A DNA stretch of 53,787 bases, the filler included, from Sluysia triapertura (lineage: Eukaryota): NCBI GenBank assembly GCA_046118255.1. It is 3 parts of 3 records of this genome, joined end to end, with 100 filler letters (N's around TTAATTAATTAA, not from the genome) between each part and the next. Parts side by side here need not be neighbours in the genome. Positions count along the whole stretch, not along the records: positions 1 to 20,013 come from JBJNIA010035484.1; 2 more parts are not named here. One strand, given 5' to 3'. This document shows positions 1 to 20,013 of the stretch, piece after piece (the first letter of the stretch is position 1; the number at the start of each line of letters is the position of its first letter). Position numbers and translations under genes: made by a program. Below the pieces are notes generated by a model, which saw only the letters and a program-made list of their open reading frames with translations, did no database searches and was not told the DNA's origin.

Positions 1-478
1 ATATATATTATAGTTTTCAATCAATTTTAATTTTTCTATTTAAATTAAATAAATTTAAAAAAACAGTCCTTACGATTTATAAATATTTAATCTCTTGTGA
101 TTAAATATAATATAAAACAAATTTGTCCAATGATTCCTTTTTAAAATAATATAGTATAAATATAAAAAAAACAATGTAGTAAAAATTCAAAGTTTTGAAA
201 AACTTTTAAAAGATTTTTTCATTAATAAAATTAAGAAAATACCTAAAGTTCTAAAAATATTAATATTAATAATATTAAATTAGATAAAAGAAATAAAGAA
301 ATAAATAAAATAAATTTAAGTTTTGTCGATATAAAAATAAAAATTATATAATAAAATCAAGTAATAATAATAATAATAAATTTTATCTAACTTGTAAACA
401 CAATTTATACCAATTTTAATTTTTTGAATTTACCTTTAAATGCAAAAAAATTAAGATAATCCCATTTAATCTAAGAGA

Positions 479-480
<2 letters not shown>

Positions 481-545
<65 letters not shown>
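481..545. repeat. (TAA)n microsatellite
   Basis: Pure TAA run. Similar runs at ~8930-8987, 31104-31146, 46085-46155, 49070-49133, 53401-53438 and 53726-53787. Confidence 0.97.
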
Positions 546-621
546 GTCGTAGTAATAATATAAATAAATAAATAACTTTATAAAATAATAATCTAATTAT
601 TATTTAATTTTTCTAAACTTT

Positions 622-1055
622 TTAAATTTTTTTATTTTTAATATTAAATTTTCCGCGATCTCCTATTGCACCAAACGAATTTTTATTATTGTTATTATTA
701 TTATTACATTGCTTAAAATTATCGGCATATGACTTTGGTTGTGGTTTGGATTTGATTATTCCATTACTCTTTGCATTTGAAATCCCCAAAGAAACCGCAG
801 CTGTGGCTGGTGTTATCGTTGATGCTGGTAACGCTGTTGACGACGTCGTAGGTGACATGTATGGTTGAGTTAGGTATGAATTATTATGATCTAATATAGT
901 TGTGCTATTGTTGTTATTGTTATTGTTACTAAAAATATTTATGTTGTAGACAGAAGTATGATAGTTAAATAATCGATTTTGATTTGTTGAATAATCAATG
1001 ACTGAATTAGAAGAATTGAATGCGTTTGTGTTAAATTGATCTGAAAAATTAAGCC
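622..1055 (-). CDS. Probable terminal exon of an unknown gene; N/S/T-rich low-complexity protein segment
   Basis: The frame of ORF 622..858 stays open upstream to a splice acceptor (ttttttaattacAG|GG, exon start 1055). It reads LNFSDQFNTNAFNSS...PYMSPTTSS...FGAIGDRGKFNIKNKKI*, and GC is higher than in the flanks. No domain recognised. Confidence 0.5.
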
Positions 1056-1843
1056 CTGTAATTAAAAAATGATTATTAATAATAATGTAAAATAAATTTT
1101 ATTTGACAACTATATTTCATTAGTCTAATGATTGGTAAATGACCTAACAAAATTTTGTTGTTATCATTAGAAGTTAGTTTTAAAAATAGAACTAGTGTGT
1201 TAAATTTCAATTTCAAAGATTTACCTTTATAAAACAAAAATATTCACATTATTTAAACATAGACATGTTCATATTTTTCGCTTTTATATATTCATAAGAG
1301 TTTATTATTAAATTCATCTACAATCTGATAATATTTTAAACTAATTTGTATTAAATTTTATAATAAAATGAATAATTACACAACATTTATGGTTTGTGTC
1401 ACATACACGATGCTTTATGTAAACGGTTTTTTAAACCATTCACGTAAACAATTATATTTTTATAATTCAAATAAAGTTTTACAGTGCGAAAAGAAATTTC
1501 TGTGCTGACCAACCCAATATCTTAGGGTTTAGTTTCAAAATATATACACCAAAATCACCTGTCACAATATTTCATAATTCATAATATTTTCAAACATTAC
1601 AAATATAAAATTACATAACATCAAATTCACATTTAATACCGAAAATCATCAATCACACACTTAAAAATTAGTCTAAAACATTTTAAATTAAATTAGTCCA
1701 ATATATCACACATTACATAACATCCTAACTATTTTCCATCAAAACCTTTTTTTATATTTTATTTCTTCAGATCCACTAAAACCATTTTTATACCTTAAAA
1801 CATTTTTTAATTCTTAATCTGACAACAGCAATCACATCCTAGT

Positions 1844-1864
1844 ATCTGCCAGTGGTTGACAGTT
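1844..1864. promoter_or_regulatory. CTGTCA-N5-TGACAG-type palindrome of family A
   Basis: CTGCCA-GTGGT-TGACAG here. Equivalents at 26351-26371, 42280-42296 and 42330-42350, plus an N4 variant at 26293-26310. Always upstream of the cargo ORF. Confidence 0.55.
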
Positions 1865-2245
1865 AATTAAACAAAACTGTATCAATAGTAATTAATGTTA
1901 ACTGTTAACAGCTGGATAATAAAAATTGTATTCTAAGCTATTATCTTATCTCTCGTTTTGGTTGCTCATTGAACATCACAACAATGTTAGAATTAATTTT
2001 TATTGATGATTCACCTTTTGAATAATTGTAAGTGGCATATTTATTTTTATAATTGAATATTTGGTGTATCAATCATATGAACGAACGTATACTAATGTTT
2101 TAACTCATAAAAATATAGTTGATTAATTTTAATAGGCAATTTTAGAAATAGTAGTATATCAAGAATCAGAAATAAACACTTAAAATTAGAAGAATAAATC
2201 ACTGAAAATTTATAGTACTGACAAAAGTATAAATCTTTTTCTATA

Positions 2246-3576
2246 ATGATAACAGCCGTACCTAAACTTTCAGATAATATTTCTAAATTAAAGTGGTAAA
2301 AACCGGTTAAAATTCAACAACATGCTATTTCATTATTGCTGGAACATAAAGATGTTATTGATTTATCTGTAACTGACAGCAAAAAACTACTCGTTATTGT
2401 ATTCAAGTAATTCAACAATATTTGGATAATGATCAGCCATTCATGTACCTAATGATTTTAATTCTCTCAGTAATTACTCAGTAATGCAAGAGTATTGTGA
2501 GATTTTAAAAATGAATGAAAGATTAAATTTGAAAAGAATGCGTTTGACTGGAGATATAGATATCACTGATCAATCAACAGAATTTAGTATTTCTGATATT
2601 CACATTATATTAGCTACTTCTGGTCGAATTTTATTGATACTTCATCACACTAGTCAAATTAAAGAAATTTTTTATTTTATTCGATACTTGCTGTTGACGA
2701 GGCAGATAAAATGATGCGTAATGAATTAGATGAAGAGATCGAAAGAATTTTACGAATATTAAATAAGAAAAGGAAAGAGAGAAATAAAAAGATATTCAAA
2801 CAATTCAAATTCACTCAACAATATGTTATAGTGATGCTAAAGCGAAGTATAGAATTATGTTTTATGATTCTCAACTTGTTGATGTCACATTAAAAAGCGA
2901 TATTCCAACACAGTTGAAATGTTAAGCTTTGACCATATCAAATCATACTGAAGATAAAGTTGCTCTTAAAATAATATGCGAAACATATATACCTAAAATT
3001 TTAGACTTTGTTAATGTTTACCCTGTCATATGGTCCTATGAATCCATTATAAACAAAATGAATATTAAAGATTTTCCAGCAGTATACCGAGAGTACTAAT
3101 GCCTCGCCGAAAATGCAGCAAAAACGTGAGCTTTCCCGAATCAAGTAATACACATGATATATTCCTTCACCGGTTTACTAACTGAGTACTGGATTTAGAA
3201 GATATTTTTATGAATTTCAATCTCAATGTTCCAAAAAAAGGTTGATATCTATCGTCATAGAATTGGGTATAATTCTACAAACTTTAATGAACGTTACGAA
3301 ACGTCTCTATGTCTGCATATGGCAACGCAAAAAGAAAAATGCACAAAATATGGTGCAAAATGCGTGTACCTCCACTCAATCAATGAATTCGAAGAGTTCG
3401 AAATCGATCCAGCAATTCGGATGACACACTACAGTAGAATAAATTACTTATTGGCAGATCTCAATAAATTTTCTTCGACATCACATCCCAATATAAAAGC
3501 TATCAAAACTGCTATCAACAATTCTACGACCAGATTTTCTTCTAATAACAATAAAGTAAACATTCATTATAATTAG
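2246..3576 (+). pseudogene. Decayed DEAD-box RNA helicase (DDX47/Rrp3-like) fused to a C-terminal CCCH zinc finger
   Basis: Read across stops and frameshifts: Q motif W*KPVKIQQHAI, motif I remnant SVTDS(K)KT, LTGDIDITDQS, Ib HIILATSGRI, II AVDEADKMM (GACGAGGCAGAT 2696-2707), VI NVPKK-VDIYRHRIG. Then YETSLC-x9-C-x6-C-x3-H (3295-3375). Confidence 0.8.
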
Positions 3577-4387
3577 AATGATGATATTTTAATTATATAT
3601 TTCTATTTGGTTAAAGAAACTGGATCTCGAAGAACGTGGCATATTTTGAAATTAACTATGATGAACATTTTTAAATTAATCATTATAAATAAAATTAGGT
3701 CTTCAATTTTGTTCTTTTGTAATGTGTTAAATTTTAGAATAATTTTATTCAATAATTAAAAAGTAAACATAATGTTTCTCAATATAACAAATTTTTATGA
3801 AATAAATAAATTGTTAAAATTCTTGAATTTCATAAGGCAACCAACCTTAAACCATCACAATTTCAAAGGATCAAATGAAAGATTTTTGGGAAAGTGATAA
3901 CAATAATTAAAGTTTTGGTTTAATGTTTTTGTTTCTAGATGTAAAATGATTTCTATATGTACTTTTATATATTTGTTACTTTTGTGTTTTCCAAAGACAA
4001 ACATATACTATTTGTCTTAGTTTCGATTGACAAGGTTTCCTAAAGAACCTATTTTCTTTGTAAATTCAACTTATAAATCAAACCATACAATTGCTTGAAG
4101 ATTTAGGAGTCTTTATATTTGTAACTGATCATTACCGATATTTTCTTTACAAATATCCTAGATTTTGGTAATATTAATCTAAATAAGCATGATGAAAAAA
4201 TGTTCAATGAATGTTACATCATTTTAAGATTATATTGTTTAATTATAACAAAGAAAGCGTTTAAATATAAATTATTATTATTTTTACATATTGATACTAA
4301 TAAAATTAGGGATCATTAACCCAATAATTTAAAAAACTCCATGAATCTATAAGTGAACACTATAAACTTATATAAATCCACTGTCAT

Positions 4388-5350
4388 TGTAGTGAGTTAA
4401 AACCCACAAAGATACATTCCCAAAAAATTGAAACACGTAAACTTCTACATATCATGAACAATAAATATTCATTTACTATTACATCCTCACATTCTCACAC
4501 ACTTATACACTCTTACATCTCAATAATCTCATTTACACGACCTAAATGTATATACTATAATCTTTATTTACATCAACCTAAATTAAACTTAAAATTTATT
4601 CTTGTTATTGTTATTACACAATCTATCTTGGTAATAGTTTCACACATTTAGAATGTTGTATCACAGAAATTGCCCTACGTGTTCTGGACGTTTTATAAAT
4701 CTAATTTTACTATTTGAGTTTCATTAAATTTAACAATTATGTAATTAAACGTATTTAGTGTAATATTAATTTTTTTCTATTGAATTCGTTTAGAGTGAAA
4801 AATCTGATTAAGTATACTATAAGTATAGTTTACAATATTATACATAATAAATCACAAAACGTAGTATAAATAGATTATTTCAAATATGCAACATAAGTAA
4901 AAGTGTATCATTTTATGTAAATTATTACTTTATTAAAGCTACTAATAGATGAAAGTTATTAAAAGTTTAAAGCTACTCTTTTCGTAATTATTAATAGCTG
5001 AAATATTAATATTGGAATGTAAGTCTATCCAAATCAGTTATTATTTATTAAGTATTAATAAATAAATCACGAAGTATTGAAAGTTTATAAAAGATTTAAA
5101 ATAAGAAAAATCAACTTAAATTTTTTAGATCAATGTGTTAAACTTGTTAATAAAACTTATTGTTATCATCTATAGTCTTATCTTTCGAAAATTTTCATTA
5201 AAATGTGCAATCGCTTCTATCGTTAGATCAGGACAAAAGACTCAACATTTTAATTGTGAATATTTGAATTTTAATAAAACCAATTTAAGCATTCTAACAA
5301 CCACTATAATATTGTTTATTAACAACGAAATAGCAGCTACATGACTCACG
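4388..5350 (+). mobile_element. Family B LTR-like element, 5' part
   Basis: Starts TGTAGTGAGTTAAAACCC followed by a G-poor arm, matching TGTAGTGAACTTAAACCC at 18369 and TGCAGTGAACTCTAAATC at 52306. The 3' end is not resolved. Confidence 0.5.
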
Positions 5351-6599
5351 AGATCGAATTATCCTGGTTTGGTAAATAAATAATTCATTTTCGTAAAATC
5401 ACCAACTTGATTATTCATCATTTCATTTTTACTTTAATGCGTTTATTATTATTTAAATTATTATTATTATTATTTGAATTTAATTCAATTTATTGCTATA
5501 TTAACTTTATATTCAAAAATTCAGTACAGTAAAATAAAATTTAATCTCAATTATATTTTCTATAATGATAATATAATCAAAAGATTACGATAATGGAATC
5601 TAAAACTAATCTTACAACTATCATTATCATTAATAAAAGCACGATATTCAAAATAACGAAAAATTATGAATTGTTATTATTGTAAATAAACTAACTAAAC
5701 TACATGTACTATACGAACTAATAAACTATCTAAACTACATGTACTATATATAAATTATTATGTATAGTTAGTGTGTAAAAAACTAATTAGTATAGTAATT
5801 TTAGCGATTAAATTTTAACATTAAATCTCTTTTAATTGTCAACTAATTTGTAGAATTAATTTTAATTTTTAAAGAAATTATTAAAATTTAAAGAAATTAT
5901 TAGGAATTATTATCTAAAAGTAAGTATAATTTAATAATCTAATAATCTAAATTATTATTTAAATTTAAAAGTGAATTTTAAAACATTTTTATTTTGTTTG
6001 AGTTTTGACCTTCAAGGTTGAAACTCACAGTATAAAGAGGTAACATAAACTTTCACACGCAATATTATTATAAATTTTGTCATTTACAATTTTGATTATA
6101 AATTTTTAATTCACAATTTTTGGCACTTTTGAAAAACGAAAATAATTTATCTTTATCCCGGATATTGGACAAGAACTTAATCGTTGCAGAACACTTTTAT
6201 AACTATGAATTTCATTTGATCTTGAAGAATCCAGAATCTTGTGATTCTATATTTTTGCAAAATAATAGTGAAAATATCGTTAGTTAATTTTTAGTAAGAT
6301 TTAGTAACATTTATTTTGCCAAGTAAACTATACGTAAAATAATATTTAACACATATTTTCACTAACCGATAAAACGATAGCAAAGTAAAATCCTTTAAAA
6401 AAATTTTATAACGACAGATATTCATTTATGGAAAATCCTATAACTTTTATATCATTTTATATTCATTGTTTTATTTATTATTGTATCAATTTTTGTTCAA
6501 TAAACCTTTAAGTTAAAACGGTGATTTTTGATTTTTAAATTTTGTTAATATTCATACGATTCTATTTAATTCGGAACCGGAGAAAATTACAAATTAAAA

Positions 6600-7110
6600 T
6601 CATTTATAAGAATTTTGGTAATTATTTAACTCTAAAATCTTAAGCAATTAAACGAAGTTAAGAAATCAAGATAATATAATAAGAGAACCTCCAGTAGTTA
6701 TAAATTATCCTTCTAAGAAAAATCCAACGGCTAACCCTAACAGCTAAGACTAGATACGTTGATGGACTCACCATAAACATTCTTTTATTCGTAAGACTAA
6801 GTTAAGAAATATAAATCAGTATTAAATAATTAACTCCTAATTAGTAACACAATAAGCTGCCCAATAAAGAAATTAAAAAGGAAGTTTAAAATAAAAATTG
6901 AAAGGATATTTCAAATTATTTAACTTTCAATTTTATTCAATAATAAAATTTATCTAAAAATTCAATTTTACTCAATAATAATCAAAATAACAATTAGTTG
7001 GGGAATTTCCTAAATTACCTAAAATTTAAATTCTTTTCAAAAAAATTAAGTAAAAGTAAAACTGTTGCCAAAATATCATGAATATTTACCAGACAGGTCG
7101 GTATTAGGCT
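6600..7110 (-). repeat. Family D repeat fragment with decayed minus-strand ORF
   Basis: 6710-6810 aligns with 12903-13000 (ggctaaccctaac...tacgttgatggactcac vs ggctagccctaac...tacgttggtggattcac). Confidence 0.55.
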
Positions 7111-7159
7111 GTTATTCACGTGATTGTAATTTGTATCATGTTGTACTAGTTGTGTTGAA

Positions 7160-7900
7160 AATTTTGGAACCTTTTATACTTTCGCACTATCCAATCACTC
7201 TTCAGTTTTATAATGAAAAATTCTCTTACACAAATCATTAGAAACTCCTTTGAGTATTCAATCTACAAAGACAGATTTGACAATTACATGGTATGGCGTA
7301 TCAAAACATAAAAATTTGATTAATGGTCAAAATTATTTTCTTCTATTTTAATTAAATTATTTCCCACATTAAAGTAACATTCATTAATATTGTCAATATA
7401 AATGAAAATAATGAATGTAACTTTAGTTTTTATAATTCAATTAATTTTTAGTTTTGCTCACCCCATTTCTAATGGAAAAGGATTAAGTTTCTTATTATCA
7501 AACAGACCATTCTATAAAGATTTAAAACCCATTTCTAGATTCTCCTCTTTCGGAGCAATCACCTCATATTCAATTCATTATTTTTTCATCATTCTAAATA
7601 TGGAACATTCAAGAATTAAGAATCAATTAAAATTTGATTTTCTCAATATTAAAACTTTTCTCGCATTAATTCAGTAAAATCATAACTTCATCAAAAGATC
7701 TTTTAAAAACACAAACAAACACAATATTCCGCATTTATGAAAGGTACTTTTTTTTAATTAAGTTAATTAAGATTTTAATTAATTAACCGATCTTTAGACT
7801 TAATCTTATTTTATGCTTAAAAGTTGTATTAAGGTTCTAAGGTTGTTTAGTACTTTAATAGGCACTCAGAAAGCTCTAGATGATTCATTATTTTGATTTC
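7160..7900 (+). pseudogene. Family C repeat: decayed gene with signal-peptide-like N-terminus and an intron
   Basis: ORF 7402..7677 starts MKIMNVTLVFIIQLIFSFA; GT-AG intron 7744-7797. The reverse complement aligns with 19560-20013, 39800-40480 and 50500-51280. Confidence 0.6.
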
Positions 7901-8926
7901 TTTCTCTACTTATTTATGTTAATTATTAGTGTATCCAATTTATCATATAGAATGCATTTTAAATTTAGATAATGAACCCACTGCTGAATCGAGTATCTTA
8001 CAACTTTTTTTAAGAAGGATGGCATAATGAGTGATGAAGGATACTGATTATTTTTATATAAGATCTTCCATGTGCTACAAAAGTAATGTCAAATACTTGC
8101 CTCTAAACACCATCATTAAAATCATAAGAACTCTCAGATTTTAATAAATTAAGAGCATTGACGCTGTGACATGCTATATTAAATCTGAAGTACATTTTTT
8201 GCATTTTGTACATAGTATTTTGAAAAAGCTCCTTTAGATGCTTATTAATTAAGAAGTTCACTATAAACCTGATTGGTTCACACCTTTTTTATCAGTTTCT
8301 TCCTTTGGTAATGTTTTAAAGTACAACTCATTATTGTCTTCAGCAGTTCTACTAAGAATCTTTATTTCAAGTATCACTTTACCTAATTTTATCTTATTTA
8401 GTATTCTAATGAAATAGATTTTAACTAAGTTTAAAGCCGCTTAAGGCCTGGCAAAACATATAGACTTGAATTTCCAGGGATGATTATATCAAAATTAAAA
8501 CAGTCTAAAACAAAATATAAAACAAAGTAATCATCATTTTTTATAACATGCATATGCCAATTAAATCTAACATAAAACTGGAACAATAATTTTGTAATTG
8601 TAAATGGGAAATGTATGTTTTTAGTTCTGTGTCATTTGGATGACTATTTACGATACATGCTTTATTGGAACTTAGAGTGACTAAGGAACGATTGGATCTC
8701 GACGGTTTAAATGCGTTAATATAGCTATATAGGACACAATCAGGTTTCATCATATTAATAATGGTGTCTTAAGTACAGCGAGTCATCATCAATTAACCTT
8801 CTAGTTTTACGGGAATCATTGGTTTGATTACGAATCATTGAATTAAAATCTTAACTCAATTTTATTAATTATATCATTTTTATTTCACAATTATCATCTC
8901 ATAATTATATAAGCATAAAACAATAA

Positions 8927-8988
<62 letters not shown>

Positions 8989-9089
8989 GATATATATAAT
9001 TGATAGTGATAATAATGAAACAGATAATAATTTACCATTTGCGATAGTAAATGTATAATAATTTATAAAATTTAAAATAATAATAATAA

Positions 9090-16949: not shown

Positions 16950-17435
16950 ATGAATGAAACTTTAAATCTATTTGGTAACAAAAGTTCTCTTACGCGATAT
17001 TTATGGATTATACATTTAATTGTATTTTTGATGGTTATATGTTTCTTTGTTGGTTCATATTTACATTATCGTTGGAAATCACGAAAGAAGCAACAAGCAA
17101 CATTTTATCAATTCTTAAAATCACGCCAAAGTCGTAATGTATTCAACAGAATTATTAATGATAATATACCAGTAACAAGTTATGCACCTAATCTTGACTC
17201 TGGAGCTATCTCTGAATCATCTATTAATATACAGAGTAATATAAGAAGCGGTAGTGCATTCGTAGCTGATAAAGATGCTTTTTTTGATGATAAAAATAAA
17301 GTGTTTATATCCAACTTAAATTATAAAAATCTTAATCAAAATAACAAACCTTACAATATTGCAGGATGCAGTGGTTTTAAGCCAAAAATTTCAATGTTCG
17401 TTGGAAAATCGTTTCAAATAAAATCAATGGAATAA
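16950..17435 (+). CDS. Single-pass membrane protein of unknown function, 161 aa
   Basis: Longest ORF in the track, intact. AAATG start context, N-terminal NET sequon, hydrophobic segment LWIIHLIVFLMVICFFVGSYL followed by basic RWKSRKK. Confidence 0.6.
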   Translation: MNETLNLFGNKSSLTRYLWIIHLIVFLMVICFFVGSYLHYRWKSRKKQQATFYQFLKSRQSRNVFNRIINDNIPVTSYAPNLDSGAISESSINIQSNIRSGSAFVADKDAFFDDKNKVFISNLNYKNLNQNNKPYNIAGCSGFKPKISMFVGKSFQIKSME

Positions 17436-18368: not shown

Positions 18369-20013
18369 TGTAGTGAACTTAAACCCTAAACATAACAATC
18401 ACAAACAAACTTCTACTCAAAGTAAAACAATTCCTAGAAACTCAACAAATTACATAACATAACAGAGTTATTCGCAATTCAACAAATTTTTTACAATAAT
18501 TGGAAGATCTCATGTAACACCTTATGTTAAAGAATTACATTCGTAACCAATAAAAGCAAGAATAGAATTCAAAATCATGACAATAATTTACAAATTCTTA
18601 CATTTTACGGAAATCCTGGATATCTTTTAGAAATAATACGAAAATGGGAAACCAAGATGAATATTTCATTGAGGCATGATAATCTATACAGAATCCACAG
18701 TGATAACAAGCTAGCTGATAGGTTGTATACTGTTTATGTCTCAAAAATATACAACCAATTATCAGAGAATGTCAAATTATTGGAAGAAATGAGAGCAATA
18801 TAAATTAATATATTATTATTAACAATCATAACAATGATAATAGTACACACATTAACATTTACACTTTGCTAGTGTTTTTCTTAAAATGACCACTAAATAA
18901 TTAGATTATAATGACAAGGTTTGCCTACAGTTAACGAATTTATGCTTAACACGATGTTCCTGTAGGATTTAGTTATATTTAAACAAGGGTCTGTAAAACC
19001 TAATTTTAGAATTTTTCTACTAAAAATATTAGCTGTAATTTGAATTCTTATAATAGTTTCTTCCAATTACTATTATTCTTAATCTGTCTCTCAAATGAAT
19101 TCAAAGAAAATTATTTTTACTTTCTTATCGTGATTGATCTGGGAAAATATTGTTGGGATTAGAAGATGAGTAAGAGACACATATAAACACAAATTTAAGG
19201 ATGAATCGATACGAAGTGATAGACTGAACATTATAAACATTGTAGGAATAACAATCATGAAAGTAAAAATACCTATAATAATGTTAACAGCTGAAGAATA
19301 CCTTAAAGTTTCAAAGACCGATATAAGGTGTCAAGACTTTGTGAAAGCTTGAAACGGACTTGGAGGTATTAGAGTACCTTTGAGTTTGTGAACAGTGAGA
19401 TAATCTGAGACCCTATTAACCTTTAGGTATTCTTGATAAGAATCTTTGTTCTTCGAGTTAAAATCTTTACAATCTTTAAAATAGTTGAGAAATAAAATCG
19501 TTGTTATTGGTATTAAGAATAAATTTAGTATAATAATAATTAACATGAAGAAGTAGAAAAAGGAATATAAGCGGTGAAGTTGAAAACATCTTGAGCCTCC
19601 TGAATAGCTTTATAACCTCAATAAAACCTTTAAACATAGAATAAGATTCACTCTAAGTAGATTACGTACGTTTTTGTGAATAACTTTTGAATTTTTTTTC
19701 TGTTGAATTTGAAACTGTGTATGTATTTGTTTTGAAAAGACCTTTCGATGAAGGTATGGTTGAACCGAGTTCATGCAAAGAAGCCTTAATATTGAGCAAA
19801 GTCAAATATTAATTAATTTTTAATTATGGAATGTTGAATTTTTTATACTTAGAGTGATGCAAATGTAATGAATGGAGTATGAGATGATTTCTATGAAAGA
19901 GGAGAATCTATAAGTGAACTCGAAATGTTTTTAAAGTGGTTCGTTTGAGAATAAGAACCTTAAAACATTTTTCATTAGAAAATTTGGTGTGAAAAATAGA
20001 AAATTAATTAAAT
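18369..20013 (+). mobile_element. Family B LTR-like element with a nested L2 fragment and an antisense family C gene; truncated by the gap
   Basis: TGTAGTGAACTTAAACCC start and G-poor arm that resumes after 18820. Minus-strand hydrophobic ORF pieces (19331..19546) and family C homology at 19560-20013. Confidence 0.55.
18470..18820 (+). mobile_element. L2-clade LINE, 3' end of ORF2
   Basis: HVTPYVKELHS*PIKARIEFKIMTIIYKFL from 18511 resembles L2 HITPxLxxLHWLPVxxRIxFK. Also IYNQLSENVKLL and a (TAT)n tail. Confidence 0.75.

What the first reader, a model, noticed from the sequence alone, without database searches (positions are those of the whole stretch)
2246..3576. Captured DDX47/Rrp3-like helicase fused to a CCCH finger exactly at motif VI
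Seen: the ORF track shows four anonymous fragments. Read across frameshifts they give helicase motifs Q, I, Ib, II (DEAD) and VI in the expected order, with no evident coding introns. Homology stops at HRIG, where RTARAG would follow, and the frame runs straight into the finger. Established: W-x-KPxKIQ and the GxDxxxQS segment resemble the DDX47/Rrp3 subfamily, and motif VI arginines are needed for ATP hydrolysis. Inference: a retro-captured host helicase, possibly catalytically dead (RNA clamp or decoy) even before it decayed.
Basis: partly seen in the sequence, partly recalled or inferred. Interest (0 to 1): 0.85.

Follow-up and report, generated by a model that had tools for sequence, protein, structure and literature searches.

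The report
Decayed copy of amplified helicase–zinc-finger chimera
This is a broken, intronless copy of a DEAD-box RNA helicase joined in frame to a CCCH zinc finger, and it is one of tens of diverged copies of the same chimera in the source genome, so it is an amplified chimeric pseudogene family, not a working gene here.

Summary
A frameshift-aware alignment of window 2231-3267 (+) to a DEAD-box profile scores 108 bits, against 31.6±4.6 for shuffles. It covers the Q motif through the first half of motif VI (HRIG), with 7 frameshifts, 4 in-frame stops and no intron-sized gap. Homology stops after HRIG. The same frame runs into a real CCCH finger (3310-3375) that matches Unkempt and tristetraprolin fingers and has Unkempt ZnF3 spacing.

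New here: the ~1.6-kb unit (about 2130-3760) is multi-copy in the only sequencing run that holds this DNA. Between 6 and 49 diverged contigs cover each listed site, against single-copy flanks. One paralogous contig at ~83% identity spans the helicase/finger junction, so the fusion is older than this copy. Where this copy is broken or non-canonical, most other copies read canonical residues or an open frame. The progenitor therefore had an open helicase frame.

No related protein was found in 1.84 billion representatives. The DDX47/Rrp3 call is only weakly supported. The mode of amplification (retroposition or transposon cargo) is unresolved: no poly(A) tail, target-site duplication, inverted terminal repeat (TIR) or LTR was seen. 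Moderately interesting: an amplified captured-gene chimera.

The parts
2130..3760 (+). Repeat unit (edges approximate): the whole helicase-finger chimera plus about 100 nt of 5' and 185 nt of 3' non-coding sequence; multi-copy in the source organism
   Evidence: summed contig depth is 200-2500 over 2138-3745 against 23-50 in the flanks (1200-1467, 3880-5200). Exact single-copy contigs break at 2175, 2212, 2550 and 3712. GC is 0.31 here against 0.19-0.25 around it.
2231..2839 (+). RecA-like domain 1 of a DEAD-box helicase, decayed. Contains upstream F and Q motif KPVKIQ (2237-2317), a motif I remnant (2366-2389), LATSGR (2610-2627) and DEAD (2696-2707). Has 3 frameshifts and 1 stop.
   Evidence: Domain-1 score 81.7 bits against null 19.7±3.1.
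2842..3267 (+). RecA-like domain 2, more decayed. Contains a MQQKRE (QxxR-like) remnant, a motif V remnant TN*VLDL (3177-3197) and motif VI reduced to HRIG (3256-3267). Has 3 stops; four frameshifts lie at or within its borders (2840, 3112, 3146, 3243).
   Evidence: alignment; 30.1 bits against 19.4±3.5, reached by 1 of 300 shuffles. SrmB and DbpA tblastn segments at 3189-3312. Pfam Helicase_C was not detected on the separate pieces.
3226..3576 (+). Intact 116-codon ATG ORF (open frame 3214-3573, 120 codons): last helicase residues, then the CCCH finger and tail
   Evidence: An open frame this long is expected by chance with P=0.014 (local composition) or 0.07 (whole window).
3295..3375 (+). 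Single CCCH zinc finger with a Y-x-T-x-x-C lead-in and C-x9-C-x6-C-x3-H spacing (ligand cysteines and histidine within 3310-3375)
   Evidence: Pfam PF25427 zf-CCCH_UNK E=3.4e-6. PDB 1m9o tristetraprolin E=1e-4; 5elh Unkempt ZnF3 E=0.007, aligned without gaps.
3376..3573 (+). 66-residue C-terminal tail of unknown origin, co-amplified with the rest
   Evidence: No family, structure or protein match. Covered by paralogous contigs.
1468..1869 (.). Separate, far more abundant repeat about 270 nt upstream. Not shown to belong to the unit.
   Evidence: depth 3500-8600, with a trough to 54 at 2004-2137 between it and the unit. No tRNA or Rfam match.

Best explanation
Window 2130-3760 is one decayed copy of a dispersed repeat family, with tens of diverged copies in the source organism. 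The ~1.6-kb unit is an intronless chimeric reading frame with three parts:
- the core of a cellular DEAD-box RNA helicase, from the Q motif to the first half of motif VI;
- a single Unkempt/TIS11-type CCCH zinc finger, joined in frame;
- a ~66-residue tail of unknown origin.

The junction is older than this copy. The progenitor frame was open and carried canonical helicase residues. This copy has since acquired at least 7 frameshifts and 4 stops in the helicase part, so it cannot make a helicase.

Inferred, not shown: the chimera arose once, most likely as an mRNA-derived (retroposed) or otherwise captured copy of a host helicase fused to a finger-coding sequence. It was then multiplied by a mobile-element machinery acting in trans, or as cargo. 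Because the motif VI arginines and the final strand and helix of RecA2 are missing, even the progenitor protein was probably not an ATPase. At most it bound RNA.
For: - Helicase homology across frameshifts: 108.4 bits against 31.6±4.6 for shuffles; both domains are individually above their null. Independent support from Pfam, PDB and E. coli tblastn and HMM.
- No intron-sized gap: 1035 nt of DNA align to 332 profile positions.
- Homology ends after HRIG in all frames.
- The finger is genuine.
- Multi-copy: 1824 contigs of run X1 lie on 1200-5200 at 80% likeness or more. Depth is 200-2500 over the unit against about 25-50 in the flanks, and 32-49 contigs cover single sites in the N-terminal half against 6-17 in the finger and tail.
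- The junction is shared: a 624-nt paralogous contig at about 83% identity spans 3089-3678.
- This copy's damage is private. At 2330 and 2619 most copies read P, giving AIP and ATPGR. At 2925 and 3183 most copies read Y and R where this copy has stops. Indels at 2472 and 2689-2693 in other copies remove two of its frameshifts.
Against: - No hallmark of any particular amplification route was found: no poly(A) tail, target-site duplication, terminal inverted repeat or LTR.
- Coverage is higher over the 5' half than the 3' half, the opposite of the 5' truncation typical of LINE-made copies. Summed contig depth is, however, a poor measure of copy number.
- The finger ORF is intact for 120 codons (P about 0.01-0.07 by chance). 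That leaves room for some selection or a young age.
- The copies themselves could not be fetched, so copy number, intactness and ancestral state rest on summary tables from one run.
Confidence: 0.6

Rival explanations
1. A lineage-specific multigene family that still has working members. Intact copies elsewhere encode a helicase-like RNA-binding protein with a CCCH finger in place of motif VI, and this locus is simply a dead member.
For: Most other copies keep canonical residues and open frames where this copy is broken. The finger ORF here is still open.
Against: A family copied quickly from a young master shows the same majority pattern without any selection. At least one other copy is also degenerate at motif VI: the loose-end consensus after 3238 reads V-D-T-Y-P-H-K-N-S. 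No related protein exists among 1.84 billion representatives. The unit is only CDS-sized, with single-copy flanks.
Confidence: 0.2
2. Cargo of a DNA transposon such as a Helitron, Pack-type or other non-autonomous element. The element picked up the chimera, and the very abundant repeat at 1468-1869 is its terminal sequence.
For: A repeat with about 10-fold higher depth lies 270 nt upstream. It ends near an 18-nt palindrome (1849-1866/1898-1915). A 38-nt 79% inverted match links 1683-1720 to 3715-3752, near the unit's right edge.
Against: Depth falls nearly to single copy (54) between the two repeats. There is no high-copy sequence on the right side. The inverted match is internal to the upstream repeat and weak (blastn E about 1e-3 in AT-rich DNA). 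Its core motif ACATTACA is not enriched: 4 matches against 1.7 expected, reached by 10 of 100 shuffles.
Confidence: 0.15
3. A chance or unrelated neighbour. A single-copy helicase pseudogene happens to abut an unrelated finger exon or a random open frame.
For: Helicase homology ends abruptly. The tail has no homologue.
Against: HRIG and the finger share one frame. Both parts are co-amplified, and a diverged paralogous contig spans the junction. The finger matches CCCH families at E from 1e-4 to 3e-6.
Confidence: 0.03

Closest known systems
DEAD-box RNA helicases, possibly the DDX47/Rrp3 branch
   Same: The Q motif with its upstream aromatic residue, motifs I (degenerate), Ib, II (DEAD), V and the start of VI occur in the right order and spacing. 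Human DDX47 (3BER) is the best or joint-best solved-structure match for the Q/I piece and the DEAD piece.
   Different: It lacks the GRxGR half of motif VI and the last ~40 residues of RecA2. It is broken by 7 frameshifts and 4 stops and is multi-copy. The longest piece matches DDX6 (cgh-1) and DDX41 better than DDX47.
Unkempt and TIS11/tristetraprolin CCCH zinc fingers
   Same: A Y-x-T-x-x-C lead-in and all four ligands. The spacing is identical to Unkempt ZnF3 (gapless alignment). Pfam zf-CCCH_UNK E=3.4e-6.
   Different: One finger only, whereas Unkempt has six and TIS11 proteins two in tandem. The score is below the Pfam curated cut-off. No other domain of those proteins is present.
Chimeric retrocopies and processed-pseudogene families; host-gene fragments amplified by transposons (Helitron, Pack-MULE and similar). 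From general knowledge.
   Same: An intronless, CDS-sized unit that joins parts of two coding sequences, is dispersed in many diverged copies and has decayed here.
   Different: None of the diagnostic ends (poly(A), target-site duplications, element termini) was found, so the mechanism is not assigned.
DDX41/Abstrakt, a natural DEAD-box helicase with a C-terminal zinc finger. From memory, not tested.
   Same: A helicase core followed by a zinc finger.
   Different: DDX41 keeps a complete motif VI and RecA2. Its finger is a CCHC knuckle well downstream of the core.

Membership tests
DEAD-box helicase (Pfam DEAD + Helicase_C) | Significant match to the family profile | tested here: met
   Separate pieces fall below the Pfam cut-off (15-16 bits against 26). 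The frameshift-aware alignment to a DEAD-box profile gives 108 bits against 31.6±4.6.
DEAD-box helicase (Pfam DEAD + Helicase_C) | Q motif and D-E-A-D (motif II) | tested here: met
   KPVKIQ at 2300-2317 with F at 2237. DEAD at 2696-2707.
DEAD-box helicase (Pfam DEAD + Helicase_C) | Walker A motif I (GSGKT) | tested here: not met
   This copy reads TDSKKL at 2372-2389. The state in other copies was not shown.
DEAD-box helicase (Pfam DEAD + Helicase_C) | Complete motif VI (HRxGRxGR) and the end of RecA2 | tested here: not met
   Only HRIG is present. The next residues and all frames downstream show no profile signal (14.4 against 13.8±2.0).
DDX47/Rrp3 subfamily | Groups with DDX47/Rrp3 rather than other DEAD-box branches | tested here: inconclusive
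   By piece, the best PDB match is DDX47 (E 0.25, tied with a planarian vasa-like protein), cgh-1/DDX41 (E 0.09-0.5) and DDX47 (E 0.21). No tree was possible.
CCCH zinc finger (zf-CCCH_UNK / TIS11 type) | Three Cys and one His with family spacing, and a profile match | tested here: met
   C-x9-C-x6-C-x3-H. PF25427 E=3.4e-6 (27.3 bits, just under the 31.1 cut-off). 1m9o E=1e-4; 5elh E=0.007.
Processed (retroposed) copy | No introns | tested here: met
   The alignment has no gap longer than a few codons over 1035 nt. Whether the parent gene has introns is unknown.
Processed (retroposed) copy | Poly(A) tail and target-site duplication | tested here: not met
   None was recognisable at about 2130 or 3760. 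Old age and AT-rich DNA could hide them.
Transposon cargo (Helitron, Pack-type, MITE-like) | Element termini on both sides that are shared by the copies | tested here: inconclusive
   An abundant repeat lies on the left only, separated by near-single-copy DNA. The inverted match is weak.
Dispersed repeat family | Many diverged copies in the same genome | tested here: met
   6-49 contigs per site, and four likeness classes from 99% or more down to under 90%, for all contigs laid on 1200-5200 (these include the more abundant repeat at 1468-1869). Flanks are single-copy. One run only.

The most novel reading that the evidence does not exclude
Intact members of this family exist and are expressed. 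They would encode a new kind of selfish or host-recruited RNA-binding protein: two RecA-like helicase domains whose arginine-finger half of motif VI and last strand are replaced by a CCCH finger, acting as an ATP-independent RNA clamp or decoy. Alternatively, the still-open 116-codon finger ORF at 3226-3576 is itself a functional small CCCH protein.
Probability: 0.12. Interest if true: 0.7.

Novelty: new member of a known kind. Interest (0 to 1): 0.4.

Why it matters
It gives a clear example of a host RNA-helicase core fused to an RNA-binding zinc finger and then multiplied to tens of copies in a very AT-rich eukaryotic genome. If any copy is intact and expressed, it would be a natural experiment in what a DEAD-box fold does without its motif VI arginines. 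If not, it is a useful marker family for dating and for annotating repeats in this genome. It also warns that helicase-like fragments there are pseudogenes and not genes.

Tried and rejected
**Searches for relatives that found nothing**
- The finger ORF (3214-3573) had no hit in the exhaustive HMMER search of 1.84 billion representatives, the word-index search, metagenome contigs or viral contigs.
- The helicase pieces had no hit either.
- Exact look-ups of five window ORFs found nothing, so neither the organism nor paralogous DNA could be fetched.

**Other checks with negative or inconclusive results**
- Rfam and tRNA scans of the whole piece were empty.
- PDB searches of pieces 2926-3096, 2788-2922 and 2541-2651 gave nothing useful.
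- Pfam found no Helicase_C on the C-terminal pieces and no transposase or reverse transcriptase in the ten pieces scanned: eight of the long open pieces elsewhere in the window and two short helicase-region pieces.
- There is no second copy of the unit in the window.
- The terminal-inverted-repeat idea (1683-1720 against 3715-3752) was dropped as too weak.
- Literature searches for a helicase-CCCH transposon or DDX47 retrocopies returned nothing relevant.

- Searching a joined read-through (X at each break) in the public libraries. It has no reference and would have meant typing a long string. The read-through was assessed only locally by aligning the DNA to a profile.
- A consensus of the copies.

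Full report
**Setting.** The piece (1-20013) is very AT-rich eukaryotic DNA: GC is 0.19-0.31, with its maximum of 0.31 exactly over 2501-3500. It has few long open frames and (AAT)n microsatellites. No RNA family or tRNA was found.

**The helicase.**
- Pfam places two separate stop-free pieces on consecutive parts of the DEAD profile. Piece 2433-2711 has E=0.017 (profile 60-122) and piece 2663-2890 has E=0.01 (profile 119-147).
- Solved structures give DDX47 (3BER residues 65-93) for 2300-2407, cgh-1/DDX41 for 2433-2711, and DDX47 (188-220) for 2663-2890.
- These hits are individually weak, so I fetched five E. coli DEAD-box genes as tool-derived references.
- Their tblastn hits cluster colinearly at 2222-2755, and SrmB and DbpA also hit 3189-3312.
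- A profile built from them ranks the three N-terminal pieces first, second and third of 1095 six-frame pieces of the window.
- A frameshift-aware profile-to-DNA alignment that I wrote gives 108.4 bits from profile position 4 to 335 over DNA 2231-3267.
- Controls for that alignment: composition-matched random sequences give 31.6±4.6 (max 44.4), the reverse complement 22.5, and other parts of the window 21.5-33.9.
- Domain 1 alone scores 81.7 against 19.7±3.1. Domain 2 scores 30.1 against 19.4±3.5 (1 of 300 shuffles reach it).
- The path needs 7 frameshifts and passes 4 stops. It has no gap of intron size.
- Downstream of HRIG no frame shows any similarity to the profile (14.4 against 13.8±2.0).

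**The finger.** The open frame 3214-3573 carries DIYRHRIG. Fourteen residues after that G comes a finger that matches Pfam zf-CCCH_UNK (E=3.4e-6, 27.3 bits, cut-off 31.1), tristetraprolin (E=1e-4) and Unkempt ZnF3 (E=0.007). The Unkempt alignment has no gap, so the spacing C-x9-C-x6-C-x3-H is the same. There is a single finger. The 66-residue tail matches nothing.

Only one public run (X1) holds most of this DNA.
- Laying its contigs on 1200-5200 at 80% likeness or more put 1824 contigs on the stretch.
- Summed depth is about 25-50 in the flanks but 200-2500 over 2138-3745.
- Single sites are covered by 32-49 different contigs in the N-terminal half and by 6-17 in the finger and tail.
- Likeness ranges from 99% or more down to under 90%; this count covers all contigs laid on 1200-5200, including those on the more abundant repeat at 1468-1869.
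- The helicase-finger unit is therefore a diverged multi-copy family. Its edges lie near 2130-2146 and 3745-3765.
- A 624-nt paralogous contig with 84 mismatches and 16 gap letters spans 3089-3678. The junction is thus shared by an old paralogue and is not private to this locus.

Decoding the best-supported differences shows that this copy's defects are largely its own.
- Most copies read P at 2330 (AIP) and at 2619 (ATPGR).
- Most read Y at the stop at 2923-2925 and R at the stop at 3183-3185, which gives the R-x-L-D of motif V.
- Other copies have indels at 2472 and 2689-2693 that remove two of the frameshifts.

The progenitor was therefore an open frame with canonical helicase residues. I describe these differences only.

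**Interpretation.** This is a decayed member of an amplified chimeric family.
- How the family multiplied is unresolved. I found no poly(A) tail, target-site duplication, LTR or convincing terminal inverted repeat.
- A much more abundant repeat (1468-1869, depth 3500-8600) lies upstream, but near-single-copy DNA separates it from the unit.
- The CDS-sized, intronless unit favours an mRNA-derived origin. The higher coverage of the 5' half argues against simple LINE-type 5' truncation, though summed contig depth is a poor guide.
- Established DEAD-box knowledge says the motif VI arginines and the terminal strand and helix of RecA2 are needed for ATP hydrolysis and fold integrity. The progenitor protein was therefore probably not an ATPase. 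That is inference.
- The finger ORF is open for 120 codons, with P=0.014 under local composition and 0.07 window-wide. This is suggestive of selection or youth but not decisive.

**Limits.**
- No protein related to the finger ORF exists among 1.84 billion representatives, in the word index, or in metagenome or viral contigs. The helicase pieces also found nothing.
- This does not exclude a host gene with the same architecture, because the organism's proteome may be absent from these libraries.
- The DDX47 assignment rests on two weak best hits and one discordant hit. No full-length eukaryotic references could be obtained, so no tree was made.
- The joined read-through was not sent to any public search because it has no reference.
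- All copy-number evidence comes from summary tables of a single run.

**Verdict.** This is a new member of a known kind: an amplified, captured or chimeric pseudogene family. Interest is moderate.

Noticed in passing
window 1468-1869: A very abundant dispersed repeat: summed contig depth is 3500-8600 against about 30 in the flanks. Many copies diverge at 1652. No ORF, tRNA or Rfam match. An 18-nt palindrome (1849-1866/1898-1915) sits at its right end. It could be a SINE, MITE or Helitron end.
   Followed up: partly
window 7476-7641 and 19805-19970: A 166-nt inverted pair, 73% complementary and 12 kb apart. Probably two copies of another dispersed repeat in opposite orientation.
   Followed up: no
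window 625-1098 (-) and 16950-17432 (+): Two unusually long open frames of 158 and 161 codons. The first is Asn-rich. The second has a transmembrane-like segment and a weak GAPT hit (E=8e-4). They may be real exons. Neither is in the protein collection.
   Followed up: partly
window 471-555 and 8914-8995: (AAT)n microsatellites.
   Followed up: no
window 2343-2536: Run X2, labelled as a different organism, holds a 194-nt contig identical to this copy at depth 2.9 and nothing else of the unit. It looks like carry-over between samples rather than a shared element.
   Followed up: no
window 3232-3238: The frameshift eight codons before HRIG lies in an A7 homopolymer run. Another copy has two fewer A's there.
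   Followed up: partly
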